64,000 nt of DNA from positions 171,182,001-171,246,000 of the forward strand of contig NC_042998.1 of NCBI RefSeq assembly GCF_006345805.1, read 5' to 3'. Position numbers and translations under genes: made by a program. Under the pieces are notes generated by a model that was given only the letters and a program-made list of their open reading frames with translations, did not search any database and was not told where the DNA came from. How positions within the stretch are numbered: position 1 is the first letter of the stretch; every line of letters starts with the position of its first letter. This document shows, in pieces, positions 10,141 through 64,000 of the stretch. Source of the DNA: Octopus sinensis (lineage: Eukaryota).

Positions 10141-10149
10141 GCATATATT

Positions 10150-21980: not shown

Positions 21981-22146
21981 GAGAGAAAGAGAGAGGAAGC
22001 TAGTAAAAACTACATCCATACATGTTGAAAAATAGATGCTCCAATGAAAATTCACATTAATAGCTATTATTGTGGATGTTCATTGGAGCATCAATTTTTC
22101 AACATGTAAGGATGTAGCTTTTACTAACTTCCTCTCTCTTTCTCTT
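21981..22146. repeat. ~165-bp near-perfect palindrome with no spacer
   Basis: Centre AATAG|CTATT at 22063/22064; symmetric arms with a few mismatches. Confidence 0.9.
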
Positions 22147-25366: not shown

Positions 25367-25387
25367 GTGAGTATTCTTCGTCCACGT

Positions 25388-33612: not shown

Positions 33613-33619
33613 ATTGGAT

Positions 33620-34325
33620 ATTAATCTTGAGATTGCTCCAATCTGGCCAGCCCATCTTTTCTCAACTCTTTCTGCCCCCTCTCTCTCACATTTCTTTACC
33701 TTTCTTACTCACTTTTCACTTCACTATGTCCCTGTCTCTCTCTTTTTTTTCTTGCCACTCCTTGATTCTTCCGCTTATCTACTTCTACACACTCTCTCTC
33801 TTTTCCCCCTCCTTAATTTCTTTGTTCCTCTTTTTCTCTCTCTTCTCTTCTCACGTGACCGTTGGCTGACTGCTAGCCCTTTTGACTGCCACATCGATAT
33901 TCTTCCCTTTGCTGTAAGGCTTCATTTCCACACAAGCCAGCTGAATTCAATTCGTCCCCAGTCGAAAGGCACCTGTTGTTATGTCCTGTTATTATTATTA
34001 TTATTGTTATTTTTATTGTATTTTTGTATTTATATTCATGTAACATCATCTGTTATTCTGTCCTCCTCTTCGTATACAGTCGATGCTTTTTTCCCAAGGA
34101 ATCTAATGCTCTTAGCTTAGTTTTTCCTTGGCACTGGATCGATCTCAAGATTAATCAGCCGAAATTGCGGAGATGGTCCAGTTTTTGACTGAAGATAAAA
34201 GGCTTCAAATGACCCGTCCTTGTTTTTTTGTATTGTCTATTTGGATGTTTTGTTGTCCCTTTTTGTATCACCAGGTTGTCTGGATGTTTTGTGTTCTTGT
34301 CCCGGTTTGCATTTTATTTTATATA
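33620..34325 (+). mobile_element. Non-coding Penelope-like element (family 2) with an inverted ribozyme fragment at its 5' end
   Basis: Colinear with 60478-61412; 33620-33653 is the reverse complement of the GGGCTGGCC...AGCAATCTCAAGATTAAT segment; ends in (TA)n. Confidence 0.7.
34077..34211 (+). ncRNA. Permuted hammerhead-like motif, decayed copy
   Basis: AUC^UCAAGA (34145-50), GAAA 34161-64, UUUUGA-CUGAAGA 34183-95; the stem II 5' strand is disrupted. Confidence 0.5.
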
Positions 34326-34379: not shown

Positions 34380-35052
34380 GGAGTTGGACTTGATTTACAG
34401 CTGAGGATAATAATATGCAGTTTAATGCTGAAAAATTCCAAGCCCTGTGCTACTAGCATCCAAAACTAAATATGAAACTTACAGGGTACACCAGTCCACA
34501 GGGAATTTCAATCCCAGAGCCTAAATCAGTGAGGGACCTGGGTATCGACATGAGTGATGATACCTCTTTCCAAGTGCACATTACCAGGATGGCGACAAAG
34601 TGCAGACAACTGGCTGGATGGATCCTAAGAACATTCAAAACCAGAGATAAGGAAACCATGATGGTCCTCTGGCAGACATTCATCCTCAGCTGCCTGGATT
34701 ACTGCTCACAGCTATGGCCACCCACCAGTGTGAAATTAACAGCAGACCTTGAAGCAATCCAGAGAAGATTCACAAAGAAGATCGTCTCTTTGCAACAGCT
34801 CAGTTACTGGGAAAGATTGAAACAGTTAAGACTCTACTCCCTGGAGAGAAGACGGGAGAAGGCAGTAATATATATCTAGAAGATACTGGAAGGAATTGTG
34901 CCAAATTTTGGAATTGAAAGCTACACCAATGCCAGAACGGGACAACACTGCATAGTGCCAAAGATCCCAGCAACGCCATTGCACTTCAGGACCAGTTACT
35001 GCAACAACCTGTGTTTCAGGGGCCCACAGCTTTTTAATATTTTCCCAAAGAC
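34380..35052 (+). mobile_element. CR1-clade LINE RT C-terminus
   Basis: ORF 34472..34879: VRDLGIDM...SCLDYCSQLWPP...LEAIQRRFTKKI...LYSLERRRE. Confidence 0.85.
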
Positions 35053-35161
35053 TGAGTGCTGGCGAATCAGATGGCTGCACCAGGCTCCAATCTGATCTGG
35101 CAGAGTTTCTATAGCTAGATGCCCTTCCTAACGCCAACCACTCCGAGAGTATAGTGGGTGC

Positions 35162-35202
<41 letters not shown>

Positions 35203-35368: not shown

Positions 35369-36482
35369 GTACGTCACTTCTTTTTCTTTTTTTTTTCATC
35401 TTGAGACAACGTTTACAACTCTCAAACCACTAACAGCAACAACAATCCCATCATCTTACTTTCATGCGTCCACCAGTGCTACAAGCCAGTAAGACTTTCT
35501 GAATGATATTCCTAACCAAAAATTACCTTGCAGTTATTTAGTAGTGTGGCCCACTTGATGATGAGCTATATCTCGTGCAACTCACTTCTCATCAAAGGTT
35601 GCCCATGTCTGCTCTACGTGTTTCTTTGACTTTTTAACTATAGCAGCCAAATCCCCACTCAACTGTCTTACAAAATCTAATAGAGGAAAGCCATATAAGA
35701 TATTGTCATCTTAGATACGCCAGTGCAGCAGGGATGGTCACATATAGAATGCTTTTGGTCACAAATTAGAAATGGTCCTGGATTAAACAGAGTCAGAAGA
35801 AGCGTCACTAAGCATAGAGACACTAATGATTCTTCCAGCTCACTGCCAATAACAATTAGGTACCTTCAGGTTAACAAAGTATCAGACCCATTGTGTTTCA
35901 GTTATTTCCCTTTAGAGTCTGAGAACAAAACTCACCATACTTTTCAATCTTCTTAAGCATACTTTTCAATCTTCTGATCTGAATAATATAAGCATCAACC
36001 TTCCCTTCCCCAAACTTAATATTCTTATACTGATGCTATACATCATTATTACTATTGTTATACTGCTAGAAACTGAATCCATGGATTTGTGTGTTATGTT
36101 CTGGGAAATAACATCTGTTGATTCCCTGTGAGGCCTTCCCATGGCTCATGGTTTGGCCTGCTTTTTATTAAAGCTAGAATATGAAGGAGACATTGTTAGA
36201 GATGTCAAAGAAGGGATTGTGAGAGAGGTATGTAGTTTATTGTGTACTATTGTAGAAAGCAGAGACACAGTATAACTGCTGGGAGTATGGCCCCTGGCAA
36301 AAATAAATGTTAAAACGATGTGGATGAAATTTGGATTAGGCACTAGGAACAGTTTTGGCGAGGTGTAGTCTATTGTTTTGAATCTAGTTAGACAACTATT
36401 ACTTATTTTATTAATATATATCAATAAGCTGGTCACTGGGGAGAATACATGTCTAGATGTTCACATTGCATCCCATATAATT

Positions 36483-36860
36483 CATCGTCATCATCATCAT
36501 CGTTTAACGTCCGTTTTCCGTGCTAGCACGGGTTGGACGGTTCGACCGGGGTCTGGGAAGCCAGGAGGCTGCACCAGTCTGATCTGGCAGTGTTTCTACA
36601 GCTGGATGCCCTTCCTAACGCCAACCACTCCGTGAGTGTAGTGGGTGCCTTTTACGTGCCACCGGCACAGGTACCAGGGGAGGCTGGCAGTGGCCATGAT
36701 CGGTTGGTGCTTTTTATGTGCCACCGGCACAGAAGCCAGTCAAAGCGGCGCTGGCATCGGCCACGTTCGGATGGTACTTTTTACACCATGTTCGGATGGT
36801 GCTTTTTACGAGGCCACGTTTGGATGGTGCTTTTTACAGGCCACGTTCGGATGGTGCTAA
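36483..36860 (-). mobile_element. RTE LINE 3' UTR copy
   Basis: Inverted relative to 31220-31642. Confidence 0.85.
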
Positions 36861-37531: not shown

Positions 37532-38730
37532 CAGTAATCCCTCGACTATTGCGATTGTTACGTTCCAAAACCCCACCACAATAGGTGAAAATCCAAGAAG
37601 TAGAAACAGTACTGTACAGTATATTTTTTAAAATTATTTTTATAATTTGTATATATTTATTTTCTTATAAATGCAAAACAACACCACATACTCGCTTCCC
37701 GACTTTATTTTCCATACAGTATGTGTGGTTCTTTGTTTACTCATCTATGGTACACTATGTATTTTCTTTTAATATATCTTAATTAATGTGTTATACAGTG
37801 TAGTACTGTAATGTATTTGGTAAATTTTTATATTAACACCTGCATGATTTTCACTAAGAAAATAATCAACTCGGATTTTTTGCATGGAATCAAGTACTCT
37901 GATCTCCTAATATGCTGCAAATCCCTTATTTTGGTTTGGAAAAAGGTGGTGGTGGTGGTGGTGGGATTAGGGGGAGACCTCCCCCCCATCCTGGAAACAT
38001 TGGAAATTTTTTTTTTGTTGAATGAATTCCTGTGACCTTCTAATATGCTACAAAACCCTTTTTGGTGTCTGAAAAATGGGGTGGGGTGATGTGGAAGCCT
38101 TGGAGATTCCACCCCCCATCCCCATTGATCTTTTCACCTGCACGATTTTCACTAAGGAAAAAAAATGAAAAAGTTGGATTTTTTTGCATGGAATCAAGTA
38201 CCCTGACCTAATATGCTGCAAACCTCTTATTTTGTTTCAGAAAAAAAGGGGGTGGTAAACCAGAGCTTCCCCGCTCATATCCCTGAATCATTGGAAATTT
38301 TTTTTTCTGGTGTTGAATGAGTTCCAGTGACCTCCTAATATACTACAAAACTTATTTTGTGTCCGGAAAATGGGGTGGGGGTCACAGGAATTCATTCAAC
38401 AAAAGAATTTCCAACGATTCTAGGATGGGGGGCGTCCCCCCTCGCCCCTGGCTCTCCCCATTTTTACGAACCAAACTAAGGGATTTGCAGTATATTAGGA
38501 GCTCAGGATACTTGATTCCATGCAAAAAATCTGAGTTTTTTTTTTTTTTTGTTAGTGAAAATCGTGTGGGTGTTAATATAGAAATTTACCAAAAATTTTA
38601 ATACCTATCAACTGTAGAAACCTGCGATATACTGAGGAGTCCGCAATATAAATTTACCTATATTAGCCAGAAAAATCCATTATATACTGAGGGTGCAATA
38701 GGTGAACCACGTTATGGTGAGTGATTACTG
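37532..38730. mobile_element. Tigger/pogo-like non-autonomous element
   Basis: TIR CAGTAATCCCTCG / GGTGAGTGATTACTG followed by TA. Confidence 0.65.
37816..38593. mobile_element. Nested foldback-like element with ~215-bp inverted arms and internal ~290-bp tandem units
   Basis: TTTGGTAAATTTTTATATTAACACC / GGTGTTAATATAGAAATTTACCAAA; arms ~37816-38035 vs ~38373-38593. Confidence 0.7.
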
Positions 38731-39556: not shown

Positions 39557-39989
39557 GCGCAGGAGTGGCTGTGTGGTAAGTAGCTTGCTTACGAACCACA
39601 TGATTCTGGGTTCAATCCAACTGCGTGGCACCTTGGGCAAGTGTCTTCTACTATAGCCTTGGACAGACCAAAGCCTTGTGAGTCGATTTGGTAGACAGAA
39701 ACTGAAAGAAACCCATCATATATGTATATATATTATGTGTGTGTGTGTGTGTGTGTGTTGTGTGTGTGTGTGTGTGTTTGTGTGTCTGTGTTTGTCCCCC
39801 CAGCATTGCTTGACAACCAACGCTGATGTGTGTATGTCCCTGTAACTTAGTGGTTCGGCAAAAGAGACCGCTAGAATAAGTACTAGGCTTACAAAGAATA
39901 AGTCCTGTGGTCGATTTGCTCAACTAAAGGCGGTGCTCCAGCATGGCCACAGTCACATGACTGAAAGAAGTAAAAGAGTAAAGAGAGTA
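39557..39989 (+). mobile_element. SINE family A, full length
   Basis: tRNA-like head (GGCTGTGTGG...GGTTCAATCC), internal microsatellite, (AAGAGTA) tail. Confidence 0.85.
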
Positions 39990-40140
39990 TCAAAATCTTA
40001 TATGTATTTTTCTGATGACATATATCTCAGGGCTACCTTACTTAATGTATCCCTTTTTAAAGTTTGGAATGAGAGAAATTTGTTTGAATTTGGCCATCAG
40101 GTTAACAAATCACATTGAGATTCTCTCATTCTATGTGCTA

Positions 40141-40269
40141 TACTCTCTTTTACTCTCTTTTACTTGTTTCAGTCATTTGACTGTGGCCATGCTGGAGCAC
40201 CGCCTTTAGTCGAGCAAATCGACCCCGGGACTTATTCTTTGTAAGCCCAGTACTTGTTCTATCGGTCTC

Positions 40270-40315
<46 letters not shown>

Positions 40316-42480: not shown

Positions 42481-42944
42481 GAGTTATGATAGAAGTTGGT
42501 TGCTTACATTTCTCTGAAGGCTGTAATACATAGTTATAGATGTACAGAGGTTGTGAGATTAAGATCCTGTACTACTTACTGTCTACAAGGCAATTGGTTC
42601 AAGTTTTGTTACTTCCAATGTGTCGTGCCTCTTCTATAATATTACTCTCCATATATAAATCATTATATGTTGCGTAATTTATGTTTTATACAAATATTTT
42701 GTAGAACTGCTAGGAGTAAATTTCTTGTATAAAAAATGAAATGGCTCAGTGACAGAAGTGCTTCACAGCATTTAGATTTTTTTCTGTTTCTTTTTTTCTT
42801 TTATCTTTCTGTGTTCAAATCCTGTCAGGATCAATAGAATAAGTTACAAGTATAGTCAATTCATTTAACATCTTCACATCTTCTACTACAAACATAATAT
42901 ATATACATACATATATACATATATATACATATATATACATATAT

Positions 42945-43039
42945 ATCTGTAAATTAATATGTTACCAATATTCAATAGCCAAGATCAAACTCAGTTTTAT
43001 CTTGGCTATCGAATATTGGTAACATATTAATTTACAGAT
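42945..43039. other. 41-bp-arm hairpin in OSTM1 intron 5
   Basis: Arms 42945-42985 and 42999-43039, one mismatch. Confidence 0.9.
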
Positions 43040-43113
43040 AAATTTCCTCTATTTACATAGTATTGAGGTCTCTTTCTTTCTTTTGTTATCTTACCGTTTT
43101 TACCAATACATAC

Positions 43114-45289: not shown

Positions 45290-46800
45290 TCAATGAACTG
45301 AAGTATTTTGGATTGCAAGACAGTATGTGAGAGAAAACTGTGATGTCATAGGAGAGAAATGTGTCTGCATGGATGCTGGTGCCCTTGTGTTTAATGATTC
45401 TGTTAAGAAAGAGGCTTGGAGATGCCATTATGAAAGACTGCTGAATGTGGAGAATAAATGGGAAGTGGAGAGTCTGCCAAAGGTTGACCCAATTGAGGGA
45501 CCAGCTACTCGAATTGACAGTACCTTGGTAGGTAGAGCTATTAAGGGAAAGCACCTGACCCATCAGGAATCACTGCTGAGATGCTTAAAATATCAGGTGG
45601 TGTGGATTATGGTCTTGTTGCCTGCATAGTAAATCAGGTAGTTCAAGAAGGAGTCATACTCAATGACTGGTGTAGCAGCACCATAGTCTTAGTAAGGAAG
45701 AAGGCTATCAAATCACAAACCCCTTCAGGTAGATGGCCCTGCTCAATCTGTAGAATAGGCGTGGGTAGAAACTCCATGCGAAGTACCCGGTGTAGGCTAT
45801 GGACGCATAAAAGGTACAGCAATATCAAAGGAAGATTAACTGGGAAGATGGTTTTTGTGTGTGACATGCACAGGAGCAATAAACACTGAAGATGTACAGA
45901 AAACAGATTTCATCACATGCCAGGGGGAGAAACTAGAAGTAGTTAATAGCTTCTGTTACCTAGGTGACCAAGTCTGTAGTGGTGGTGGTTGCTCTGAGAG
46001 TGTAGAGTAAGAGTAGCCTAGGCAAAGTTCAGAGAGCTCCTACCTCTGCTGGCAACTAATTGCGTCTTGCTCAGGATGAAAGGTAGACTGTATGATGCAT
46101 GTATGTGAACCCCCATGCTACATGGCAGTGAAACAGGGGCCATGACTGCTGAGGACATGATAGGCTTGAAAGAAATGATCCACTGGATGTAAAATTTCAG
46201 TGTGCATACACAACAGAGTGTAAGTGCCTTGAGAGAAAAGTTGGGCATAAGAAGCATCAAATGTGGTGTGCAAGAGAGACGACTGTGCTGGTATGGTCAT
46301 GTGTTGTGTATGGATGAGGACAGTTGTGTGAGGAAGTGCCACTCCCTAACTGGAAGGAACCTGTGGAAGAGGTAGACCCAGGAAGACAGAGGATGAGGTA
46401 GTGAAACATGACCTTTGAGCATTGGGCTTCACAGAGGCACTGACAGGAAACTGAAACCTTTGGAGATTTCTGTGATTGAGAAGACCTGGCAACTAAAGTG
46501 AGATTGCAACCATGCATGTCCAGCCCAGTTAAGAGTACCCCTGATGCATTGGGCAATATGATATACTTGAGAAGACCTGTTGAGTCAAGTAAAACCAATA
46601 TCATAGCTGTGGCCAGTGCCCCCTGACTGGCTCCTGTGCTGGTGGCACATAAAAAGCACCATCCAAATGTGGTCAATGCCAATACCGCCTGACTGGCCCC
46701 TGTGCCATTGGCATGTAAAAAGCACTATCCAAACGCAATCGATGCCAGGTCTGCCTGACTGGCTCCTGTGCCGGTAAAAAGCACCCACTACATTCTTGGA
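45290..46800 (+). mobile_element. RTE LINE, internally deleted, with 3' UTR
   Basis: ENCDVIGEKCV...PNDW-like, WPCSICRIGVGRNS finger, YLGD and MLHGSET motifs, then tandem 3' UTR. Confidence 0.85.
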
Positions 46801-47029
46801 GTGGTTGGGAGCAGATACAGACACCTTCTTTGCTCCGCTATATTTGATAGGAAGTTGACAGAAAGGGCATGTGACTGTAGAAACAAAGCTAAAAATGAAG
46901 TGTGTAAGTGAGATGTGTTCTTCTGACTCATCTAGGAGGACAGTAACTCTGAATAAGAACTAACTTAGAACCATGACAACCTGTCTGAGCCATGCTTGGA
47001 TGGAAAATGAACATGAAATTATGATGATG

Positions 47030-47350
47030 AGGATCATCATCATTTAACGTCCACTTTCCATGCTAGCATGGGTTGGACGATTTGACTGAGGTTTGGCAAA
47101 CCAGATGGCTGCACCAGGCTCCAATCTGATCTGGCAGAGTTTCTACAGCTGGATGCCCTTCTCAACACCAACCACTCCGAGAGTGTAGTGGGTGCTTTTA
47201 TGTGCCACCAGCACGAGAGATAGTCAAACGGTACTGGCAACGGCCACGCTCAAATGGTGCTTTTTATGTACCACCTGCAAAGGAGCCAGTCCAGCGGCAC
47301 TAGTAAAAACCTTGCTTGAATGTTTTTTCACGTGCCACCAGCACAAGTGC
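47030..47350 (-). mobile_element. RTE LINE 3' UTR copy
   Basis: (CAT)n start, GGATGCCCTTC motif. Confidence 0.75.
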
Positions 47351-48825: not shown

Positions 48826-49330
48826 ATATCATCATCATCGTTTAACGTCTGTTTTCCATGCTAGCATGGATTGGATGGTTTGACTGGGGACTGGCAAGCC
48901 AGGAGGCCGCACTAGGCTCCAATCTGATCTGGCAATGTTTCTACAGCTTGATGCCCTTCCTAACACCAACCACTCCAAGAGTGTAGTGGGTGCTTTTTAT
49001 GTGCCACCTGCACGGGAGTCATTCAGGCAGAACTGGCATTGGCCACGTTTGGATGGTGATTTTTATGTGCTACCAGTACAGGAGCCAGTTGGAGCAGGGA
49101 GGCTGGCATCGACCACGTTTGGAAGGTGCTCTTTATGTGCTACCGGCACTGGGACCCAATCAGGCGGCACTGGAAACGACCCATGCATATGTGCTTAATG
49201 ACCCATGCAATACGTGCTTATTGCGTGCCACCAGCACGTGAGCCAGTCGGGTGGCACTGGCATCGGCCACAACTACAATTTCCAATTGATTTTGATTTTA
49301 TTTGACTCAATAGGTCTCCTCAAGCATGGA
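48826..49330 (-). mobile_element. RTE LINE 3' UTR copy
   Basis: Same motifs as 47030-47350. Confidence 0.75.
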
Positions 49331-49619: not shown

Positions 49620-50062
49620 AATATATAACCAAAATCGAAGTTGATCAAAATCAATGGAAATTGCAGCTGTGATACCAGTGCCGGTGGCACAAAAGCGAAC
49701 CATCCGATCGTGGCCGTTGCCAGCGCCGCCCCGACTGGCCTCCGTGCCGGTGACATGTAAAAAGCACCATCCGATCGTGGCCGTTGCCAGCCTCGCCTGG
49801 CACCCGTGCCGGTGGCACGTAAAAAGCACTATCCGACCGTAGCCGTTTGCCAGCCCCGTCTGGCACCTGTGCCGGTGGCACGTAAAAAGCACCCACTACA
49901 CTGACGGAGTGGTTGGCGTTAGGAAGGACATCCAGCCGTAGAAACATTGCCAGGTCAGACTGGGCCTGGTGCAGCCTTCTGGCTTCCCAGACCCCAGTTG
50001 AACCATCCAACCCATGCTAGCATGGAAAGCGACGCTAAATGATGATGATGATGATGATGATG
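49620..50062 (+). mobile_element. RTE LINE 3' UTR copy
   Basis: Same motifs, (GAT)n tail. Confidence 0.8.
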
Positions 50063-50195
50063 ATATATGTGTGTATATATGTGTATATGTATGTATATAT
50101 ATATATGTCCTGTTATTATTATTATTGTTTTTTTGTATTATTTTTGTATTTATATTCGTGTAACATCGTCCGTTTTTCTTTCCATGTTTCGTATA

Positions 50196-50337
50196 CATTC
50201 GATCCTTTTTCCAAGGAATCTAATGCTCTTAGTTTAGTTTTTCCTTGGGGCTGGCCCGATTGGAGCAATCTTAAGATTAATCAGCCAAAATTGCGAGGAT
50301 GATCCGGTTCTTGACTGAAGATTAAAGGCATCGAATG
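50196..50337 (+). ncRNA. Permuted hammerhead-like motif (family 2; G12 to A) within a Penelope-like remnant ~50100-50400
   Basis: All six helices can be paired; CUGAAGA 50315-21; AUC^ at 50270. Confidence 0.6.
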
Positions 50338-50435
50338 ACCCGTCCGTGTTTTTTGTATCGTCTATCTGGATGATTTGTGTTCTTGTCCTATTTTGTATTT
50401 TATATATATATATATGTATTATGCATGTATGTATG

Positions 50436-50468
<33 letters not shown>

Positions 50469-50487
50469 ATATGTTTATATATATATA

Positions 50488-50526
<39 letters not shown>

Positions 50527-50691
50527 AGAGAGAGAGAGAGAAAATTCATGAAAAAAAAACAAAAGATGAAGACAGGTGGTGTAGAAAACAAACAGATGTA
50601 TTAGTATACATATATATACATCCAACCCATGCTAGCATGGAAAGCGGATGTTAAACGATGATGATGATATACATATAATATACATATATAC

Positions 50692-50748
<57 letters not shown>

Positions 50749-50810
50749 TAGATAGATATATACATAGATACATATAAACGTGTGTATCTATGTATCTTTC
50801 CTTTTCCTAT

Positions 50811-50841
50811 GTTTCTGACGAAGAGCTCCGCTCGAAACGTT
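50811..50841 (+). ncRNA. Minimal type I hammerhead copy ending at its predicted cleavage site
   Basis: 50791-50841 is identical to 51906-51956; identity stops after GAAACGTT. Confidence 0.6.
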
Positions 50842-51348
50842 TATATGTATATATGTATATCTATATATTTATATGTATATATATGTATATATGTATATTT
50901 ATATGTATATATCTATATATGTATATTTATATATGTATATTTATATGTATATATCTATATATGTATATTTATATGTATTTATATATGTATATATATATAA
51001 TATATATGTTTATATGTATATATGTATATTTATATGTATATCATCATCATCATCGTTTAACATCCGCTTTCCATGCTAGCATGGGTTGGATGTATATATG
51101 TATATATATTATATATATATATGTTTACATATATGTATATTCATGTGTATATATATGTATATTTATATGTAATATATATATATATATATATGTTTATATG
51201 TATATATGTATATTTATATGTATATCATCATCATCATCGTTTAACATCCGCTTTCCATGCTAGCATGGGTTGGATGTATATATGTATATATATTATATAT
51301 ATATATATGTTTACATATATGTATATTCATGTGTATATATATGTATAT

Positions 51349-51386
<38 letters not shown>

Positions 51387-51813
51387 GTGTATGTATATAT
51401 GTATGTACATATATATGTATATATGTATATATATATATATGTGTATATATATATGTATATATATATGTGTATATATATATGTATATATATATGTGTGTAT
51501 ATATATGTGTATGTATATATTTGTGTATATATATATATGTATATACATGTGTATGTACATATATATGTATATATATGTGTATGTATATATATGTATATAT
51601 ATGTGTATGTATATATATGTATATATATGTGTATGTATATATATGTGTATATATATGTGTATGTATATATATGTGTATATATATGTATATATATATATGT
51701 GTGTATATATATATATGTATATGTATATATGTGTGCATATATATATGTGTGTGTATATATGTGTATATATATATGTATATATGTGTATATATGCGTACAT
51801 GTGTGTATATATG

Positions 51814-51860
<47 letters not shown>

Positions 51861-51925
51861 CGCGTGTGTACTGTTGGCGATTTTTTTCCTCTGTCTTCCC
51901 TTCTTTGTATCTTTCCTTTTCCTAT

Positions 51926-51960
51926 GTTTCTGACGAAGAGCTCCGCTCGAAACGTTAAAC
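51926..51960 (+). ncRNA. Minimal type I hammerhead ribozyme, intact core, in a Penelope-like LTR remnant (~51858-52075)
   Basis: GUUU-CUGACGA-A-GAGC[UCC]GCUC-GAAA-CG-UU^AAAC; palindromic ACGU stem III. Confidence 0.75.
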
Positions 51961-52319: not shown

Positions 52320-53128
52320 GTTGTGCGGGAAGTTCGTGCCGATTTATTGTAGCTTACATTTCGTCTTATTTTAGAACATGGTTGAGTTCATAAAATAGGA
52401 TTTGACTACACCGCCATTTAGAGCACAGCTTAAGCTATCATTTCGTGGAAGAAGGTTTATGTTCCTATAACCTGTGTTAATTCTGTAACCCTTTAAAATG
52501 GAAGATAAAGTTCACTTTCGGTACTTGATGCTTTTCTTTTTCCGTAAAGTGAAAAATGCCTCACAAGCAACCAAAGATATATGCGCAGTTTACGGTGATG
52601 TTTCTTTATCCGAAAGAACTGTTCGGAAATGGTTCGCAAGGTTTCAAGCTGGAGATTGTAGCCTTATTGATAAAGAGCGATCAGGCAGACCATCCACTAC
52701 AGATGATGACCAAATCAAGTCACTAATTGGAAATAACCCACATTGCACAACCCGAGAATCAGCAGAAAGCCTCAACCTATCAAAATCCGTCGTTCATGAG
52801 CCCCTGGTAAAGCCTGGGTACACAAATAACTACGATGTTTGGGTACCACATGAGTTGAGTGAGAAGACCCTTTTGGATCGCATTTCCACATGTGATTCGC
52901 TTTAGAAACGGAAAGAAAATGCGCCTTTTTTAAAGCCAATTGTGACAGGTGATGAGAAATGGAATATCTACCGAAGTGTTCAGAGAAAGCAATCCTGGAG
53001 TAAGCGACATGAGCCACCCTTAGCCACCCCAAAGGCGGGTCTTCGCCCTAAATAAGTCTTGCTTTGTGTCTAGTGGGACTGAAAAGGAATTCTGTATTAT
53101 GAGCTTCTCCCAAGTAACCAGACAATAA
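52316..53128 (+). mobile_element. Mariner element, 3'-truncated, pseudogenised transposase
   Basis: Inserted in (TA)n; ORF 52498..52905 with RSGRP and WVPHEL; IVTGDEKW follows a stop. Confidence 0.9.
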
Positions 53129-53924: not shown

Positions 53925-54550
53925 AGTTAATTTGGCTCAAAAGCAAATAGCAAGGCCATGTAGGGGGCAATGGAGTTAAGTACAGGGTGGTGTTCATGTA
54001 AAGAGTTCAGGCCACTTGAGGTCAAGGGAGGCTTTGAACAAAGCGGTCGTCGGCATCTTCACCATCTCGTCTGGCAGCTTGTTCCATGGATCCGCAACCC
54101 GGACGAAGAAAGCTCCTCTCCTTCGATTGAGATGAAATCGTCGCAGGTAGAGCTTTTCGGAATGACCCCGCAGCCAACGCTCTGGAGCAGGAGTGAAGAA
54201 CAGCTCTTTCGAGAGGTTACACTTTCCGCTTATGATGTGGGCGAGAATGAGATCACCACGGCGGCGTCGTTTTTCTAGAGAATAAAGGTCGAGCGTCCTC
54301 AGCCTTTCTTCATAGGACACATTTTTGAGACCATAAACCATGCGGGTAGCCAGCTTCTGGACCCTTTCGAGATACTGTATGTCTTTGAGGAGATAAGGAG
54401 AAGAGGCTTGAATCCCGTACTCCAATATGGGTCTCACCAGCGTGACATAGAGTGGTAGGAATATGGCTGCTGTGAGCATTCCGAATGACCGTCGAATCAA
54501 GAACAGAATTCCGCGTGCTTTGTTGGCAGCATGGATGCACTGGGCCGATT
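53925..54550 (-). mobile_element. CR1-clade LINE 3' end
   Basis: VRPILEYG...LERVQKLATRMV...SYEERLRTLDLYSLEKRRRRGDLI...FVRVADPWNKLP. Confidence 0.9.
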
Positions 54551-54599
54551 TTATTTTCAGTATATATGTATCATTATTCTCAGTATATATTTATTTTAT

Positions 54600-55620
54600 T
54601 TTTATTCGGAAGCCATGTGGCGATGGGAAGGTAGCGAAGCATGCAGACCTGACGAGTTGGAAGCATGTAGTCGGCGACCTACATGTAGGCAGTCCATACT
54701 AGATATAAAGTCGTCTCCTTGTCGTCCAAGAAAGCGATAGGATTCGGTTGCTGCATGGGTGTCTGAGCAGCTCTATTTGGAGAGGGCACAGCTCACCCGG
54801 AGGCCGGGGAGGTTATAGAATAATATGTGGTAGCTACGGAGGTATTGCTCTACTATCAGCTGGTGGCAAGGTTCTGGAAAATATTCTTACCCACCTGAAT
54901 GTGTGTCTCGTAAATGCTGTCCTACCTGAATCTCAATGTGGCTTCCGATCTGGTAGAAAGACAATGGATATGATTTTCACAGCAAAACAGATGCAGGAGA
55001 AGTGCTATGAGAAGAATATGGATCTTGTCCACGTATTCATTGACTTAACCAAGGCCTTTGATACTGTGAATTGGGCCTTGCTATGGAAAATACTTGGCAG
55101 ACTTGGATGTCCGGATCACTTTGTATCTATAATTAAATCATTTCATGATGGGATGGAGGCTTGGGTCAATATTGGTGGTGGCATGACGGGACCCATTCCT
55201 GTAGAGAAAGGTGTCAATCAGGATGACATTCTTGGAGAACTTGTTAGTGGAAAGAGTTCCAGACAGAAACCAAGGCTGCGATTTAAGGACTGACTCAGTT
55301 CCTCATTAAAGGCCTGTGATATGCAGGAGACTGACTGGAAGAGCAATACCTGCCGTCGCCACAGATGGAGGAAGCAGGTTAAGGAGAGGGTCGACAGCTT
55401 TGAGAGAGCACGTATGCTACATGAAGAATTTTAAGCGTGCTGCTCGAAAACGCACTGCTAGTGTAGTGAATGGGGAAAGCTTGGCTTGCAATGTTTGCAG
55501 TCGTGTATGCTTACCAAGAGAGGACTCATTAGCCACCAACGGAGCTGCAAATGCAAAATAGTTAGTCCTAGAGCGCACAATGTTCATAAAGGTCAGCAAT
55601 GGTCTTCCTCAGTCACGAGT
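54600..55620 (+). mobile_element. RTE LINE with large internal deletions
   Basis: LPESQCGFRSGR...FIDLTKAFDTVN joined directly to the C-terminal RLRFKD region and a CNVCSRVC finger. Confidence 0.9.
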
Positions 55621-57555
55621 GGACGGCCATCATCATCATGTATGTATGTATGTATGGATGGATGGATGTATGGATGGATGGATGGATGGATGGGTGGGTG
55701 GGTGGGTGGATGGATGGATGGATGAATGTGTGTGTGTGTGTGTGTTGTGTGTGTGTGTATACATGTATATATTTATACTACAAGAATGCACAAACCTTAT
55801 AATCCTTTTTCACATACTAGATGTTACTTAACATCTATATAAATGAAAACATTGGACATTTATCTATACTTCACTACGTGCGTGAATGCACATATGCACT
55901 CACACACACATCGATATTTTGGCCTCCACATTCCTCTCATTTTCTTTCCTTCGCTTACTCTTATCATTTGTCGTTCTCTCCTTCTTTCATTCTATCTTTC
56001 TAAACCTCTTTCTCCTGTCTTCACTTACTCTCAGTGTCGCACATTGTATCTCATTTTCTGGTCTCATTATTCCACTCCCAAAATTCCTTTTGTACTAGGC
56101 TTGTTAATTAAACAAATGTCGTAAATTTTGTATCGTTTTCTTTTCTCTATTTCGCTCATTTCTCTCATTCTTTTTCCTTCACTTTGATAAAGGGTACAAT
56201 TTGAGACGTTAGATTTCTTTCAACTTCTTTCATTGGCAAATATATTTTCACAGTACACATTCTTATATTGTTGTTTTATTTCATATTTCTAATTTTTTCT
56301 CTCACATGTTTTGCCTGTCTGACTCCATGTATTATTTGTTTGTTTGTCTCCTCCCTGTGTCACAGTCTTATTCGTTCAATTTGTGCAGTTGTGTGTGTGT
56401 GTATATGATGGTGGTAATCAACTCGATGCCGAGCATAATCACATTTTCATTGCAAACATATGATATTTGTGACATTTCTGTCACGGGCCTTCAGATGATA
56501 CTGAGTCCAGATTTTGTTTTAAATACAGAGCAACCTCGGTTCTCGAACGTCTCACATGACGAACAAATTGGTTTTCGAATTGACAATTCGAGATGAAAAT
56601 GCCTTGGTTATCGAACAAAATTTTGGTTCTCGAACAACATTGCCAAACCGAGTTAACCCGAACGGAATCATTATTCGTTTTCTTTTCCAATTTTATTGTA
56701 CTGTGCCTTATTTTCTCTTCATCAGTCCTTAGTCATGGCTCTAAAGAAAGCTAGCAGTAATACTGATAAAGGAAAAAGAAAAGTTGAGATAAAAACAGTT
56801 GAAATGGAGAAAGAAATCATCGCAAAACACGAAAATGACGTTTGTGTGTCAGATCTCGCCGTGCAATACTGTATGCCTAAATCAGCAATATCTACTATTC
56901 TGAAAAATAAGGAAGTGGTAAAAGCAGCTGATGTTGTAAAAGGAGTGACTGTTATTAATAAACAAAGACCACTCGAAGAAGTGGAAAAGTTATTGCTTAT
57001 TTTTATAAATGAGAAACAGTTAGCAGGTGACAGTATCAGTGAAGTATCTATTTGTGAGAAAGCATTAAAAAGTTACAATGATCTAGTAAAGAAAACCTCT
57101 GGTACAAGTACTGAAAGTGATACTTTTGAATACAAAGCTAGTAGAGGCTGGTTCAAGAAATTTAAGAGAAGTGAAATAACACAGTGTAATTAGGCATGGA
57201 GAGGCAGCGAGTTCAAACAAAGAAGCGACTGAGAAATTTGTGATTGAGTTTAGTGACTTGATAAAGGAAGGAGGTTATCTCCCCCAACAGGTGTTTAACG
57301 GGGATGGAACAGGATTATTTTGGAAATGAATGCCAAATAGGACCTATATTACCAAGGAGTAAAAAGCATTGCCAAGGCACAAGCCAATGAAAGATGGAAG
57401 TTTTTATGGAAGGTGGGCTCCCCTTCTAAAAAATAACACACTTTTGTGTGTTATTTACAGTTTGAATAAACGTTTTTATACTAAAATATATAGTGTAAGC
57501 ATGTAAATAAGTATTCATCTGGTGCTTGGAAACGAATTAATCTCTTTTACATTGT

Positions 57556-60477: not shown

Positions 60478-60691
60478 TTGACTGAAGACTGAGGGGTTCG
60501 AATGTCCTGTCCATGTTTATTGTGTCGTCTTCTAAGAGTTATACGTTCTTGTCCATGTTGTATTTTTCTACATACCTTAACATATATTCCAGGCGCCCCG
60601 TACCCACCTTATCATTAATGTGAGCACATATTCTTAATAATTGGTACGACTCTCTTTGTCTCCCTCTCTCTCTCATTTTACTTGATCTGTC

Positions 60692-60731
<40 letters not shown>

Positions 60732-61408
60732 ACTCATCCTCTTTTTCTCTTCTCTTTACCCTCCTTTTTCTTTGTCTCGCTCTGCACTCACAGTCATTCT
60801 TCGACACCCATCCCTTCTCATCTCTGATCCCTTCTTTCTCTCTCTTCTCTCTCTTTGTTGCGTTTTGTCCCTCGTCTCTCTCTCTCTTCCTTTGCTTCTC
60901 TTTCTTTTCTTTTCCCTCTTCTCTGTCACGTGACTGTTGGCCGAAATCTGCCTTTCAGCTCCTGACCCTCGTCGTGTTAACATCGTTGTTTTTCGTCCGC
61001 CGCTATAAAGGCTTCTTCCAATGCGCCAGAGAAAAAATTTGTTTGCTTGTTATCAGTCGTAAGACACTTGTTGTTTTCACCGTTAATGCTTCTGTATTTC
61101 ATGTTTCTGTATTCCATTATTGTTTTTTGTTTTTTTATATCTGTCCCTTTTGCTGTCCTGGTGTTCGTATGCATTCGATCCTTCTTCCAGGAAATCTACG
61201 CTTCCAGCTTAGTTTTTCTAATGCTCGTTGCTTAGTTTTTCTTGGAGGGCTGGCCGTGATCTAGTAATCTCAAGATTAATCAGCCGAAATTACTACGATG
61301 ATCCGGTTCTTGACTGAAGACTGAGGGGTTCGAATGTCCTGTCCATGTTTATTGTGTCGTCTTCTAAGAGTTATACGTTCTTGTCCATGTTGTATTTTTC
61401 TACATACC

Positions 61409-61412
<4 letters not shown>
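60478..61412 (+). mobile_element. Non-coding Penelope-like/retrozyme-like element (family 2) with 103-bp identical direct terminal repeats
   Basis: 60478-60580 equals 61310-61412; flanked by (TA)n; no RT ORF. Confidence 0.8.
61172..61336 (+). ncRNA. Permuted hammerhead-like ribozyme candidate with complete core
   Basis: AUC^ 61269, GAAA 61286-89, CUGAAGA 61314-20, each in register with 6-bp stems I and III; G10.1-C11.1 pair 61248/61285. Confidence 0.7.
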
Positions 61413-61451
<39 letters not shown>

Positions 61452-61599
61452 TATATATAATACAAAATAAGAAAATGGAGAAATATATCTTAATCAATAA
61501 TCAACTACCAGATAATACCCAATCACATAATTTATTAAACCACTACATATGAACATTAATGTCAAACATAATAATATAGAACAGAACAATGTGCATATA

Positions 61600-61666
<67 letters not shown>

Positions 61667-62109: not shown

Positions 62110-63200
62110 GATAGGTTTCGGCCATTATTGGCCCAGGCCATGTCTAACTTAATAGCACCACCTGGTGAAGTCTTTCAAGTCAGAATTTGGGCACTATGGC
62201 CCACTCAAGTAGAGAGTTATTGTTTACAGAGACATATCCGGGTGTAGGGGGTTTATCCGGGATTTCTTGAAGGAATCTGTCCAAAGACTTCTTGAACCCT
62301 ATAGGGTCAGTTTCTGTTTTAATGTGTTTTGGTGTAATGTTAAAGAGAGCGGGGCCAATTGAGGTGAAATAATTGTGCCGTATTGTTGTTATGAGATGAG
62401 AGTGCGATTTTTGTTTGGGGGATGGCACGGGGCCCAAGCCTGGATGTACCCTAAAGGTGATGCCAACATCATTTGAGCAATGCTGATGGAATATTTTCCA
62501 CATCATGCAGATGATGTAGCGCTCACGACGACGTTGGAGAGAATAAAGTTTTAGCTTTTCTAGTCGACCCCAATAGTCGAGGCCTGTCATGCCATCTATC
62601 TTTTTTGTGATTGCCCTTTGAGGTGCTTCAACTTTTATGATACCTTGTATTGTGTGGGGAGACCACAGTGGACAACAGTATTCAAGGTGGGGTCGGGCAA
62701 AAGTGGAGAAGAGAAGGATAATGGTGTGGATATCTCTCGACTGGAAAGTTCTGAGAATCCAGGAACACATTCTGCGAGCCATGTCAACTTTGGTGCTTAT
62801 ATGAGTGGCCCAGCTTATGTTGTTGTCCACAATTACTCCCAAGTCTCTGATGTTGTTGGACGCCGCGAGAGTTTCACCTGAAGGAAGGGAGTATGGGAGT
62901 TTCAGGGCATCCTCTTTTCCAAAGTGGATTAACTCAAATTTATCCTCGTTCAGCAGCATATTGTTTTTTTCTGCCCATTGGATAACAGCCAGTAGATCTG
63001 ACTGAAGGCATGTCCGGTCAATCGCCTCATTTATGACCTTCTGTAGCTTGGAATCATCTGCAAAAATTTTTATGTTGCTGTGCTTGATGATGTCATTAAT
63101 GTCATTAATGTAAATGATGAAAAGAAGTGGGCCCAGCACAGTGCCTTGCGGAACGCCACTACTGACTTTGGCTGGGCTTGATTTTACCCCTTCAACTGCA
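62110..63200 (-). mobile_element. CR1-clade LINE, 5'-truncated, open RT frame
   Basis: [20 protein letters not shown]...IFADDSKL...[11 protein letters not shown]; 5' end abuts a TA-rich microsatellite. Confidence 0.92.
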
Positions 63201-63674
63201 ACATATATGTGTATATATATATATATGTGTGTGTATATATATATATGTGTGTATATATATGTATATATGTATGTATATGTATACAGGTATATGCTTGTAT
63301 GTATATGTATATATACGTTTATATGTATATATGTATAATACATGTATATATGTATATATACGTATATATATGTATATATATTTATTATATATATATATGT
63401 ATATATATATATATGTATCGATATATATATGTGTGGTATATATATTATACATATGTATATATATATATATATATGTATGTATATATATGTATATATATAT
63501 ATGTATCTATGTATATGTATATATAATATATATATATGATATATATGGGTACATATGTATATTAATGTATATATATATATATATATATATTGTATATATA
63601 CATATATATATGTATATATTGTATATATATGTATATGTATATATATGTATATGTATATATATGTATATAATATA

Positions 63675-63721
<47 letters not shown>

Positions 63722-63739
63722 ATATATATATATATATGT

Positions 63740-63995
63740 GGAGGCGCAATGGCCCAGTGGAATCGCAGTCGGAGGATCGCAGTTTCGTTTTCCAGACCGG
63801 ACGTTGTGTGTGTTTATTGAGGGAAACACCTAAAGCTCCACAAGGTTCCGGCAGGGGGTGTTGGCGACCCCTGTTGCACTCTTTCGCCCCAACTTTCTCT
63901 CACTCATTCTTCCTGTTACGTATTATCTGGATTGGCCACAGAAACCGGGAAACCGGGCCCATGAGCCTGGTTAGGCTTGAAAAGGGCGCAAAAAA
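63740..63995 (+). mobile_element. tRNA-derived SINE (family D)
   Basis: GGAGGCGCAATGGCCCAGTGG head; matches 41677-41980. Confidence 0.75.
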
Positions 63996-64000
63996 TGTAT

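What the first reader, a model, noticed from the sequence alone, without database searches (positions are those of the whole stretch)
61172..61336. Hammerhead ribozyme core assembled in reversed strand order (candidate new topology)
Seen: 5'-X5'(CATTCGA/TCCTTC 61172-84), hairpin W (CCAGGAAA 61187-94 / TTTCTTGG 61238-45), II5' (GGCTG 61248-52), IIIb5' (GCCG-T-GATC), III' (AGTAAT 61263-68), C17 (61269), I (TCAAGA 61270-75), TTAAT, II3' (CAGCC 61281-85), GAA, III (ATTACT 61289-94), IIIb3' (GATCCGGT), I' (TCTTGA 61308-13), CTGAAGA (61314-20), X3' (GAGGGG-T-TCGAATG). Every conserved hammerhead nucleotide (C3-A9, G12-A14, A15.1-U16.1, H17, G10.1-C11.1) sits in the right register against its stem. 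Established: types I, II and III are the three cyclic permutations of one strand order (CUGANGA, GAAA, UH). Here the order is UH, GAAA, CUGANGA, the reverse cycle, so stems I, II and III cross each other. Versus the 50196 copy there are true compensatory changes in stem III (C-G to T-A), W (G-C to A-T) and X (T-A to C-G), plus wobble-preserving changes in stem I. Inference: a monomer looks sterically strained. More plausibly the IIIb/III hairpin loop of one repeat docks into the W/X multiloop of a second repeat, giving an obligate-dimer ribozyme that cuts only when two LTR copies are present. I know of no description of this topology.
Basis: partly seen in the sequence, partly recalled or inferred. 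Interest (0 to 1): 0.95.

Follow-up and report, generated by a model that had tools for sequence, protein, structure and literature searches.

The report
Hammerhead-like motif in octopus repeat
A short repeated element in an octopus genome carries every sequence piece of a hammerhead self-cutting RNA in reversed order; that order was already described in 2023, this copy differs from it in one defining feature, and nothing yet shows that it cuts.

Summary
They lie in a ~300-nt repeat of an Octopus genome. The window holds three copies and one 110-nt partial copy, and these are not LTRs.

The order UH, GAAA, CUGANGA is not new. It is the "type SGC" hammerhead that Eckert et al. validated in 2023. 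One defining feature fails. The stem II 5' strand lies upstream of the cleavage block instead of directly after CUGAAGA, so A9 and G10.1 are joined only through stem X and hairpin W.

- **Against:** Rfam gives no hit. Covariation among the three copies is no better than shuffles. One copy has G12 changed to A, and another lacks the stem II 5' strand.
- **For:** A compact motif of this quality occurs in about 0.06% of shuffled windows. That is roughly 25 per octopus genome, or about 0.25 if the bridging helix is also required. The 58-nt block 61263-61320 is much better conserved than the rest of the repeat.

My best reading (0.55) is a conserved, folded domain near the 3' end of a retroelement-like repeat, with an unproven hammerhead resemblance. 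A genuine permuted ribozyme has a probability of about 0.3.

The parts
61172..61184 (+). X 5' strand (CATTCGA/TCCTTC). It pairs with 61323-61336.
   Evidence: Read. It is in the minimum-free-energy fold of the 61k and 50k copies. Two pairs are broken in the 34k copy.
61187..61245 (+). Hairpin W (CCAGGAAA / TTTCTTGG). In this copy the loop carries a 22-nt duplicated insert at 61195-61216.
   Evidence: The insert is absent from the other two copies.
61248..61252 (+). Proposed stem II 5' strand (10.x, GGCTG). It lies upstream of the cleavage block, not after CUGAAGA.
   Evidence: It is identical in the 50k copy and deleted in the 34k copy.
61253..61261 (+). It is equivalent to the 3' strand of the type-SGC stem I/II bridging helix.
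   Evidence: It forms 8 bp with one bulge against 61300-61307. This is the least conserved part of the motif.
61263..61275 (+). Block S: stem III strand AGTAAT (16.x), C17 at 61269, and stem I strand TCAAGA (1.x). The predicted cut lies between 61269 and 61270.
61276..61280 (+). TTAAT linker between the stem I and stem II strands. It is invariant in all three copies.
61281..61294 (+). Block G: stem II strand CAGCC (11.x), G12-A14 (GAA) and stem III strand ATTACT (15.x).
   Evidence: G12 is A in the 50k copy.
61300..61307 (+). 3' strand of the IIIb / bridging helix (GATCCGGT).
61308..61320 (+). First part of Block C: stem I strand TCTTGA (2.x) and CTGAAGA (C3-A9).
   Evidence: CTGAAGA is invariant in all three copies and in the partial copy.
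61323..61336 (+). X 3' strand (GAGGGG-T-TCGAATG).
60588..61419 (+). The 61k repeat unit. It comprises a CT-rich tract, a TCACGTGACTGTTGGC box, a T-rich part, the folded domain and a 3' end that runs into (TA)n.
60478..60587 (+). Partial copy, 99% identical to 61310-61419. It starts at TTGACTGAAGA and directly abuts the 5' end of the 61k unit, which gives a partial tandem (pseudo-LTR-like) arrangement.
50104..50456 (+). The 50k copy. It is 72% identical to the 61k copy and has G12 changed to A.
33980..34300 (+). The 34k copy. It is 81.5% identical to the 50k copy. It lacks GGCTGGCC plus two further bases. Stem I, the core and a 6-bp ACTGGA/TCCAGT helix are kept.
33620..33653 (-). Inverted 34-nt fragment of the same repeat (GGGCTGG...AAGATTAAT), next to the tail of another repeat.

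Best explanation
The region is the conserved, strongly folding domain about 70-230 nt from the 3' end of an old repeat unit in an Octopus genome.

I infer that the unit is a non-autonomous retroelement copied by target-primed reverse transcription. The reasons are that the copies share a 3' end, differ in how far they extend 5', lie in (TA)n tracts, and in one case form a near-identical partial tandem of the kind seen in Penelope-like elements.

The RNA of the + strand folds into a closing stem X, a hairpin W and a 3' subdomain. That subdomain has three mutually exclusive helices: II, III+IIIb and I. The 58-nt block 61263-61320 was kept while the rest of the unit drifted.

The most likely role, by analogy with the conserved 3' stem-loops through which LINE and SINE RNAs are recognised by their reverse transcriptase, is recognition or stabilisation of the element's RNA. 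This is inferred, not shown.

On this reading the hammerhead-like arrangement is a resemblance. It has the block order of the known type-SGC hammerhead but breaks that family's rule that CUGAnGA runs directly into stem II. There is no evidence here that it cleaves.
For: - **Organism.** An OSTM1-like exon at 24980-25370 is 100% identical to an Octopus vulgaris protein over the matched part.
- **Repeat structure.** There are three copies plus one partial copy. Homology between the 34k and 61k copies extends upstream. (TA)n flanks the copies. The partial tandem is 99% identical.
- **Fold.** z-scores are -3.0, -2.7 and -2.3 for the three copies on the + strand, against -1.8 for the - strand. X and W are in the minimum-free-energy fold. 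The nested fold with II (-55.2 kcal/mol) and the one with III+IIIb (-54.5) are nearly equal.
- **Conservation.** Block 61263-61320 is 90% and 83% identical between the 61k copy and the other two. The rest of the unit is 62% and 54% identical (Fisher p about 2e-5 and 4e-5).
- **No ribozyme family match.** No Rfam family is matched at the gathering score. No ribozyme family is matched at E up to 10.
- **No covariation.** Covariation is no better than shuffles.
- **Strand asymmetry.** The proposed 5' partners, 61248-61262, are the worst conserved part.
- **Damaged copies.** G12 is A in one copy, and the stem II 5' strand is deleted in another.
- **Copy ends.** Copy boundaries do not coincide with the predicted cut site. 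The partial copy starts at the position equivalent to 61310, not 61270.
- **Chance.** Compact chance motifs are expected about 25 times per 2.7-Gb genome (2 of 3326 shuffled windows).
Against: - The full arrangement is unlikely by chance in a single window. It has three crossing helices of 6, 5 and 6 bp, all 13 core nucleotides in register, a total length of 73 nt, and an 8-bp helix in exactly the place of the type-SGC bridging helix. The estimate is about 6e-4 per window without that helix and about 6e-6 with it.
- The motif is on the sense strand of the repeat. It lies in the best conserved block.
- The one irregularity falls between A9 and G10.1, a core junction where an extra unpaired nucleotide is known to be tolerated (cited in PMC4209133).
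- The retroelement assignment itself is inferred from three or four copies in one window. No partner reverse transcriptase was found. The 34k and 50k copies may be one segmental duplication.
Confidence: 0.55

Rival explanations
1. It is, or was in the source copy, a genuine self-cleaving hammerhead of the reverse-order (SGC/GCS/CSG) class.
- The chain is joined where type SGC has its ends: the bridging strand runs into stem III through U61262.
- The chain is opened between A9 and G10.1. There, stem X and hairpin W form a four-way junction that holds the two ends together.
- It would cut after C61269 in cis. In the element's RNA it could play the role that hammerheads play in the pseudo-LTRs of Penelope-like elements.
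For: - All core nucleotides and all four helices map one-to-one onto the type-SGC description.
- The size is compact: 73 nt here against 79-81 nt for SGC-1 and SGC-2.
- The chance estimate is low.
- The block containing S, G and CUGAAGA is significantly conserved.
- The changes in stem I are only wobble-preserving. There is one double change in stem III.
- The 34k copy keeps the bridging helix through a C-G to T-A double change.
- The majority consensus of the copies keeps the whole motif.
- The motif is on the sense strand, near the 3' end of a unit with a partial tandem and (TA)n targets. These are traits of Penelope-like elements, which carry hammerheads in their terminal repeats.
- Naiad-type elements lack canonical hammerheads but show unexplained "half cores".
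Against: - Block C is interrupted by about 150 nt. No described hammerhead shows this, and Eckert et al. treat it as disallowed.
- Only one of three copies has an intact motif.
- Covariation is not significant. The double changes are transitions, which are the commonest kind of substitution, and the IIIb change lies at a CpG.
- The 5' strands of II and IIIb are poorly conserved while their partners are nearly invariant.
- The TTAAT linker is invariant although the model does not need it to be.
- With only 1 nt and 5 nt between IIIb and III, the fold is sterically tight.
- There is no Rfam hit.
- No copy begins or ends at the predicted cut site.
Confidence: 0.3
2. It is an obligate-dimer ribozyme. 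The III/IIIb hairpin loop of one LTR copy docks into the X/W multiloop of a second LTR copy, so that cutting needs two LTRs.
For: - In trans the pairing is topologically easy.
- Dimeric hammerheads are known in Penelope-like elements and satellite repeats.
- The 50k copy keeps the GGCTG and TCTTGA-CTGAAGA strands.
Against: - The copies are not LTRs of one element. They are 72% identical, lie 11 kb apart and enclose unrelated transposon fragments.
- The only near-identical second copy (60478-60587) contains CUGAAGA alone. It has no stem II strand and only part of the stem I strand.
- Type-SGC ribozymes with the same four helices cleave as single ~80-nt transcripts in vitro.
- Nothing in the sequence requires a dimer.
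Confidence: 0.03
3. The resemblance and the conserved block have no RNA-level function. The copies are local segmental duplications in a repeat-rich intron, and the uneven conservation reflects uneven mutation and alignment quality.
For: - All copies lie on one strand within 27 kb.
- The 34k and 50k copies each follow a copy of the same other repeat, colinearly and at similar identity: 83% and 81.5%.
- No copy was found in any outside collection that I could search.
- Between the 50k and 34k copies the block is not better conserved than the rest.
Against: - The + strand folds better than shuffles in all three copies.
- The conservation contrast for the 61k copy is strong.
- A shared 3' end with (TA)n flanks and different 5' extents fits transposition better than duplication.
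Confidence: 0.1

Closest known systems
Type-SGC hammerhead ribozymes (HRIMA-1 motif and variants; Eckert, Friedrich, Weinberg & Weinberg, NAR 2023, PMC10085705)
   Same: - Block order: cleavage site, then GAAA, then CUGAnGA.
- Stems I, II and III all cross one another.
- A short linker joins the stem I strand to the stem II strand (typically 3 nt, here 5 nt).
- The linker from stem III to that helix is short (0-44 nt in the family, here 5 nt).
- The overall size is about 75-80 nt.
   Different: - In type SGC, CUGAnGA runs straight into the stem II strand and the bridging strand is the 3' end. Here those two strands (61248-61261) lie 5' of the cleavage block and are joined to stem III by 1 nt.
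- A9 and G10.1 are connected only through stem X and hairpin W.
- Type SGC comes from metatranscriptome sequences found alongside hairpin ribozymes, in what are thought to be circular RNA genomes. It has copious covariation and shown cleavage. This motif is in an animal genome repeat and has neither.
Minimal type-I hammerheads in the pseudo-LTRs of Penelope-like elements (Cervera & de la Pena 2014, PMC4209133; Frangieh et al. 2024, PMC11167929)
   Same: - Hammerhead core motifs sit on the sense strand, in the terminal part of a retroelement that forms partial tandems and inserts in AT-rich DNA.
- A dimer mode of action has been proposed for them.
   Different: - Those are ordinary type-I order (CUGANGA, helix II hairpin, GAAA, UH) with little or no helix III. 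No such arrangement exists here: there is no GAAA in the roughly 100 nt after CUGAAGA.
- No RT/GIY-YIG reading frame was found in the window.
"HHR_core" and "HHR_half_core" of Naiad Penelope-like elements (Craig et al. 2021, PMC8557442)
   Same: - CUGANGA lies in the 3' region, with GAAA at an unusual distance or on the "wrong" side.
- Insertions favour (TA)n.
- 5' truncation, partial tandems and inverted fragments are seen.
- Remnants are reported in Octopus species.
   Different: - Those were noted only as sequence strings that fit no stem-loop descriptor.
- Whether this repeat is a Naiad derivative could not be tested. The paper's supplement is not held.
Hammerheads with an extra unpaired nucleotide between A9 and stem II (De la Pena & Flores 2001, as cited in PMC4209133)
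   Same: The irregularity is at the same junction, A9 / G10.1.
   Different: Those have one bulged nucleotide. Here the insertion is about 150 nt, folded as two helices, and the RNA ends exit through it.

Membership tests
Hammerhead ribozyme (any type) | Conserved core: C3-U4-G5-A6-N7-G8-A9, G12-A13-A14, the A15.1-U16.1 pair, and H17 | tested here: met
   The 61k copy has CTGAAGA at 61314-20, GAA at 61286-88, the A61289-T61268 pair and C61269. The 34k copy also has them. The 50k copy has A at G12.
Hammerhead ribozyme (any type) | Three helices I, II and III meet the core in register, with a G10.1-C11.1 pair | tested here: met
   The 61k copy has I = 6 bp, II = 5 bp (6 with a G-U pair) and III = 6-7 bp. 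Stem II is absent from the 34k copy.
Hammerhead ribozyme (any type) | Match to a curated covariance model (Rfam types I, II, III, HH9, HH10) | tested here: not met
   There is no hit at the gathering score in the window. No ribozyme family is matched at E up to 10 in 60900-61600. This is expected for a permuted order, so it is weak evidence.
Hammerhead ribozyme (any type) | Covariation that supports the stems | tested here: inconclusive
   Only three copies are available. Paired cells are 85.3% against 84.7% in shuffles. Double changes number 2 against 1.3, and 203 of 500 shuffles do at least as well.
Hammerhead ribozyme (any type) | Site-specific self-cleavage 3' of H17 | not testable with these tools
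   This needs in vitro transcription. The genomic copy boundaries do not fall at 61269/61270.
Type-SGC hammerhead (Eckert et al. 2023) | Blocks in the order S (site), G (GAAA), C (CUGAnGA) | tested here: met
   S is 61263-75, G is 61281-94 and CUGAAGA is 61314-20.
Type-SGC hammerhead (Eckert et al. 2023) | Block C is uninterrupted: the stem I strand, CUGAnGA and the stem II strand are contiguous, with at most 1-2 nt inserted | tested here: not met
   After A9 (61320) comes CTGAGGGG. The best contiguous pairing to CAGCC, allowing an offset of 0-2 nt, is 1 bp ("canon" value). The stem II strand GGCTG is at 61248-52, upstream of Block S. A weak downstream alternative (GGTT 61327-30 with AGCC) would need a 6-nt insertion and competes with stem X.
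Type-SGC hammerhead (Eckert et al. 2023) | A fourth helix joins the far sides of stems I and II | tested here: met
   GCCG-T-GATC (61253-61) pairs with GATCCGGT (61300-07), giving 8 bp placed directly next to the stem II and stem I strands. In the 50k copy 7 of 8 pairs hold. The 34k copy has ACTGGA/TCCAGT, 6 bp.
Penelope-like element terminal repeat with hammerhead | Type-I or minimal hammerhead (CUGANGA, helix II, GAAA, UH) in the repeat | tested here: not met
   The only hit in that order in the repeat-masked window has stems of just 5 and 4 bp and no stem II, and lies outside this repeat. There is no GAAA in the roughly 100 nt after CUGAAGA.
Penelope-like element terminal repeat with hammerhead | Partial tandem (a truncated copy directly upstream of a longer copy), 5' truncation, and an AT-rich or (TA)n target | tested here: met
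   60478-60587 is 99% identical to 61310-61419 and abuts the 61k unit. (TA)n flanks the copies. Other retroelements and unequal crossing-over could give the same picture.
Penelope-like element terminal repeat with hammerhead | Reverse transcriptase with GIY-YIG endonuclease, in the element or in a partner that shares its 3' end | tested here: inconclusive
   By eye, none of the window's open frames of 70 aa or more resembles a Penelope-type RT or a GIY-YIG endonuclease. A Pfam scan of ten of them found only partial RVT_1 matches that look like LINE fragments. The rest of the genome could not be searched.
   The 50k and 61k copies are 72% identical. The interval holds mariner HTH, LINE RT and Tc5 fragments and a large microsatellite block.

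The most novel reading that the evidence does not exclude
An animal retroelement carries a working hammerhead of the reverse-order class. Its chain ends lie inside Block C, and the A9/G10.1 junction is bridged by two extra helices.

This would be a further permutation beyond the six that Eckert et al. considered possible. It would also be the first non-circularly permuted ribozyme in a eukaryotic genome. It could explain why some Penelope-like lineages, such as Naiads, seem to lack hammerheads yet show "half cores".
Probability: 0.3. Interest if true: 0.8.

Novelty: new variant of a known kind. Interest (0 to 1): 0.5.

Why it matters
If the RNA cleaves, three things follow:
- Non-circular permutation of ribozymes would extend from environmental circular RNAs to animal genomes and retroelements.
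- A hammerhead block thought to be indivisible could in fact be split.
- There would be a concrete descriptor with which to search for "missing" hammerheads in Penelope-like elements.

If it does not cleave, it is a useful caution. A complete-looking hammerhead core with three stems turns up by chance a few dozen times in a genome of this size. Calls of this kind need covariation or a cleavage assay.

Tried and rejected
- **Canonical hammerhead or any other known RNA family.** Rfam gives nothing at the gathering score and no ribozyme family at E up to 10.
- **tRNA-derived SINE head.** The GGTTCGAATG looks like a B box, but ARAGORN finds no tRNA-like gene. That sequence is the 3' strand of stem X.
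- **Minus strand.** It has no CUGANGA/GAAA arrangement and folds less well.
- **Type-I reading starting from CUGAAGA.** There is no GAAA in the roughly 100 nt downstream.
- **Stem II strand directly after CUGAAGA, as true type SGC needs.** Only 1 bp forms contiguously. GGTT/GGCT/GGC, 5-6 nt downstream, could give 3-4 bp, but this competes with stem X.
- **LTR retrotransposon bounded by the 50k and 61k copies.** Rejected.
- **More copies from outside the window.**
  - Exact-pattern scans of metagenome, prokaryote-genome and viral collections returned only chance 20-mers.
  - A search with the translated repeat found nothing.
  - Relatives of the LINE RT came from other animals or from 1-kb contigs.
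  - The Octopus OSTM1 protein and the window's own open frame are not on record for contig look-up.
  - A related octopod contig is only 1.1 kb long.
  - The supplement with Naiad consensus sequences is not held.
- **Sensitive profile search of the window.** It found no further copies.
Full report
**What is in the sequence.** They run in this order:
- stem X 5' strand (61172-84)
- hairpin W (61187-94 with 61238-45)
- GGCTG (61248-52)
- GCCGTGATC (61253-61)
- AGTAAT (61263-68)
- C (61269)
- TCAAGA (61270-75)
- TTAAT
- CAGCC (61281-85)
- GAA (61286-88)
- ATTACT (61289-94)
- ACGAT
- GATCCGGT (61300-07)
- TCTTGA (61308-13)
- CTGAAGA (61314-20)
- CT
- stem X 3' strand (61323-36)

I wrote a descriptor scan requiring CTGANGA, GAAA, U-H, a stem I and a stem III, with G-U pairs allowed, in any block order and on both strands. 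It finds this site as the only one in the window with both stems of at least 5 bp. The site scores I = 6 bp, III = 7 bp and II = 6 bp.

**Where it sits.** The window is animal DNA. An OSTM1-like first exon at 24980-25370 is 100% identical, over the matched part, to an Octopus vulgaris protein. The window is full of interspersed repeats and microsatellites.

The finding lies in a repeat that has three copies on the + strand:
- 61100-61400, called 61k here
- 50104-50456, called 50k
- 33980-34300, called 34k

There is also a 110-nt partial copy at 60478-60587 and an inverted 34-nt fragment at 33620-33653. The 61k copy is 72% and 75% identical to the 50k and 34k copies. The 50k and 34k copies are 81.5% identical to each other.

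The 34k and 61k copies also share weaker homology upstream. It comprises a CT-rich tract, a TCACGTGACYGTTGGC box and about 130 nt more. The unit is therefore about 700-830 nt long, and the finding lies 70-230 nt from its 3' end. The copies end in or next to (TA)n.

The partial copy is 99% identical to the 61k copy's own 3' end. It directly abuts the 5' end of the 61k unit. A shared 3' end, different 5' extents, (TA)n targets and a near-identical partial tandem are what Penelope-like elements and some other retroelements leave behind.

This assignment is inferred. I found no partner reverse transcriptase. The 34k and 50k copies each follow a copy of another repeat colinearly, so they may be one segmental duplication.

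The copies are not LTRs. The 11 kb between the 50k and 61k copies holds a mariner HTH, LINE RT fragments, a Tc5 domain and a large microsatellite block.

**Screens against known families.** Rfam gives no hit at the gathering score anywhere in the window. It gives no ribozyme family at E up to 10 around the site. ARAGORN finds no tRNA-like gene. There is no hammerhead in ordinary order here. The contiguous pairing between the bases after CUGAAGA and CAGCC is 1 bp.

**Is it more than chance?** I ran the descriptor on dinucleotide-preserving shuffles of the window.
- A loose motif (I and III of at least 6 bp, II of at least 5 bp with G10.1-C11.1, any block order, stem II strand anywhere within 150 nt) appears in 12 of 3000 shuffled windows.
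- A compact motif (at most 90 nt in all) appears in 2 of 3326.
- An 8-bp helix at one fixed place, like IIIb, occurs at about 1% of random positions.
- The reversed window gives fewer relaxed hits than the real one, so hairpin-rich sequence does not inflate the null much.

For this one window the motif is therefore unlikely: about 6e-4, or about 6e-6 with IIIb. Over a 2.7-Gb genome one expects about 25 compact chance motifs, and about 0.25 with IIIb. I do not know how many windows the first stage read. Chance cannot be dismissed.

**What the copies say.**
- The 50k copy has A in place of G12, the general base of the hammerhead mechanism.
- The 34k copy lacks GGCTGGCC plus two more bases. It therefore has no stem II 5' strand, and two X pairs are broken.
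- The majority consensus of the three copies keeps the full motif.
- On the three-copy alignment, 85.3% of pair cells are standard pairs, against 84.7% after shuffling partners. Two pairs change on both sides, against 1.3 expected, and 203 of 500 shuffles do as well.

The double changes are transitions, and the IIIb change lies at a CpG.

A stronger signal is uneven conservation. The 58-nt block 61263-61320 is 90% and 83% identical between the 61k copy and the other two. The rest of the unit is 62% and 54% identical (Fisher p about 2e-5 and 4e-5).

The proposed pairing partners of that block, 61248-61262, are the least conserved part. That asymmetry is not what a helix under selection usually shows.

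**Folding.** The + strand folds better than shuffles in all three copies (z = -3.0, -2.7, -2.3). The - strand folds less well (-1.8). X and W are in the minimum-free-energy fold. In nested folding, stem II, the III+IIIb hairpin and stem I exclude one another. The best fold with II (-55.2 kcal/mol) and the best fold with III+IIIb (-54.5) are nearly equal. All of them together would need a double pseudoknot.

**Comparison with the literature.** It has.

Eckert, Friedrich, Weinberg and Weinberg (NAR 2023, PMC10085705) divided the hammerhead into three blocks:
- Block S holds the cleavage site.
- Block G holds GAAA.
- Block C holds CUGAnGA with its two stem strands.

They found natural "type SGC" ribozymes in exactly this order. 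They showed covariation in all stems and showed cleavage at the predicted site. They also reported type CSG and one GCS example.

Their type SGC has a fourth helix that ties the far sides of stems I and II together. It lies 0-44 nt after stem III.

Its 3' strand directly precedes the stem I strand and CUGAAGA. Its 5' strand directly follows the stem II strand.

The octopus motif therefore has all four type-SGC helices and the full core in 73 nt. It differs in one way. In type SGC the stem II strand and the bridging strand follow CUGAnGA and form the 3' end. Here they precede Block S and are joined to stem III through U61262. The chain is open between A9 (61320) and G10.1 (61248), and X and W close that gap.

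In other words, it is a circular permutation of type SGC opened inside Block C. [quoted passage not shown] This defining feature was tested here and is not met. A single extra unpaired nucleotide at that same junction is known in some hammerheads (cited).

Penelope-like elements carry minimal type-I hammerheads in their terminal repeats, and these are thought to act as dimers. Naiad-type elements lack them but show unexplained "half cores", with CUGANGA and GAAA at odd distances. Remnants of Naiads are reported in Octopus species.

**Reading.** My most probable explanation (0.55) is that this is a conserved folded domain near the 3' end of a retroelement-like repeat. It was probably kept because the element's RNA needs it for recognition or stability. 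That role is inferred by analogy with LINE and SINE 3' stem-loops. On this reading the hammerhead likeness is unproven and possibly coincidental.

The main rival (0.3) is a genuine ribozyme of the reverse-order class with its ends inside Block C.
- For it: the one-to-one match to type-SGC architecture, the low single-window chance, the conserved block, the sense strand and the Penelope-like context.
- Against it: the split block, the lack of covariation, the unconserved 5' strands, the tight linkers, and the fact that only one copy is intact.

A purely neutral origin by local duplication remains possible (0.1).

**Novelty and next steps.** The topology class is known. The particular chain connectivity, and its presence in an animal repeat, would be a new variant if the RNA cleaves.

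Two tests would decide it. The first is a genome-wide alignment of copies scored for covariation. The second is an in vitro cleavage assay of 61165-61345, with expected products of 105 and 76 nt. Its controls are G5A and G12A mutants, stem rescue mutants, and a rearranged construct that restores a canonical type SGC.

Noticed in passing
window 24980-25370 (+): An open frame with a signal-peptide-like start and a cysteine-rich part. It matches an Octopus vulgaris OSTM1 (osteopetrosis-associated transmembrane protein 1) model at 100% over about 30 residues, and a 178-aa product from another octopod read set at 75%. It is probably the first exon of the host gene. If so, the repeats downstream on the same strand may be intronic, but I did not verify that.
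   Followed up: partly
window 10142-10560, 31224-31643, 33357-33614, 35050-35165, 36474-36784, 46564-46808, 47033-47344, 48828-49181, 49647-50069: A high-copy, ~420-nt SINE-like repeat with internal 62-66-nt subrepeats and a (GAT)n tail. At least nine copies are present, on both strands. Two copies lie just upstream of the 34k and 50k copies of the repeat studied here, colinearly and at similar identity. This suggests one duplicated segment.
   Followed up: partly
window 61195-61216: The 61k copy has a 22-nt insert in the loop of hairpin W. It looks like a diverged tandem duplicate of the next 22 nt (TCTA..GCTTAGTTTT). It is absent from the other two copies.
   Followed up: partly
window 33620-33653 (-): An inverted 34-nt fragment of the repeat (GGGCTGGCC...AAGATTAAT). 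It contains the very segment that the neighbouring 34k copy has lost. It sits between the (GAT)n tail of the SINE-like repeat and the CT-rich tract. It may be a trace of a rearrangement or of an inverted truncated copy.
   Followed up: no
window 50403-51960 and 63166-63999: Long, complex TA/TG/TATG-type microsatellite blocks with direct and inverted self-similarity. They produce long spurious open frames rich in Y, I, C and V.
   Followed up: no
window 52489-52902 (+), 53997-54590 (-), 54709-55290 (+), 56657-57190 (+), 62183-63202 (-): Fragments of unrelated transposons: a Mos1/mariner HTH_48 domain, LINE reverse-transcriptase pieces (RVT_1) and a weak Tc5/pogo DNA-binding domain. The LINE copy at 62187-63087 is 72% identical at the DNA level to a 934-bp contig of assembly GCA_024449705.1.
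   Followed up: partly
window 21973-22154, 38135-38572, 39860-40273, 42941-43043: Four large self-inverted (palindromic) stretches of 100-440 nt, at 70-93% arm identity. They were seen in the self-comparison.
   Followed up: no
window 60926-60941 and 33850-33865: A shared box, TCACGTGAC(C/T)GTTGGC, which contains the palindrome CACGTG (an E-box). It lies upstream of the folded domain in both the 61k and 34k units and is the best conserved piece of the upstream homology.
   Followed up: no
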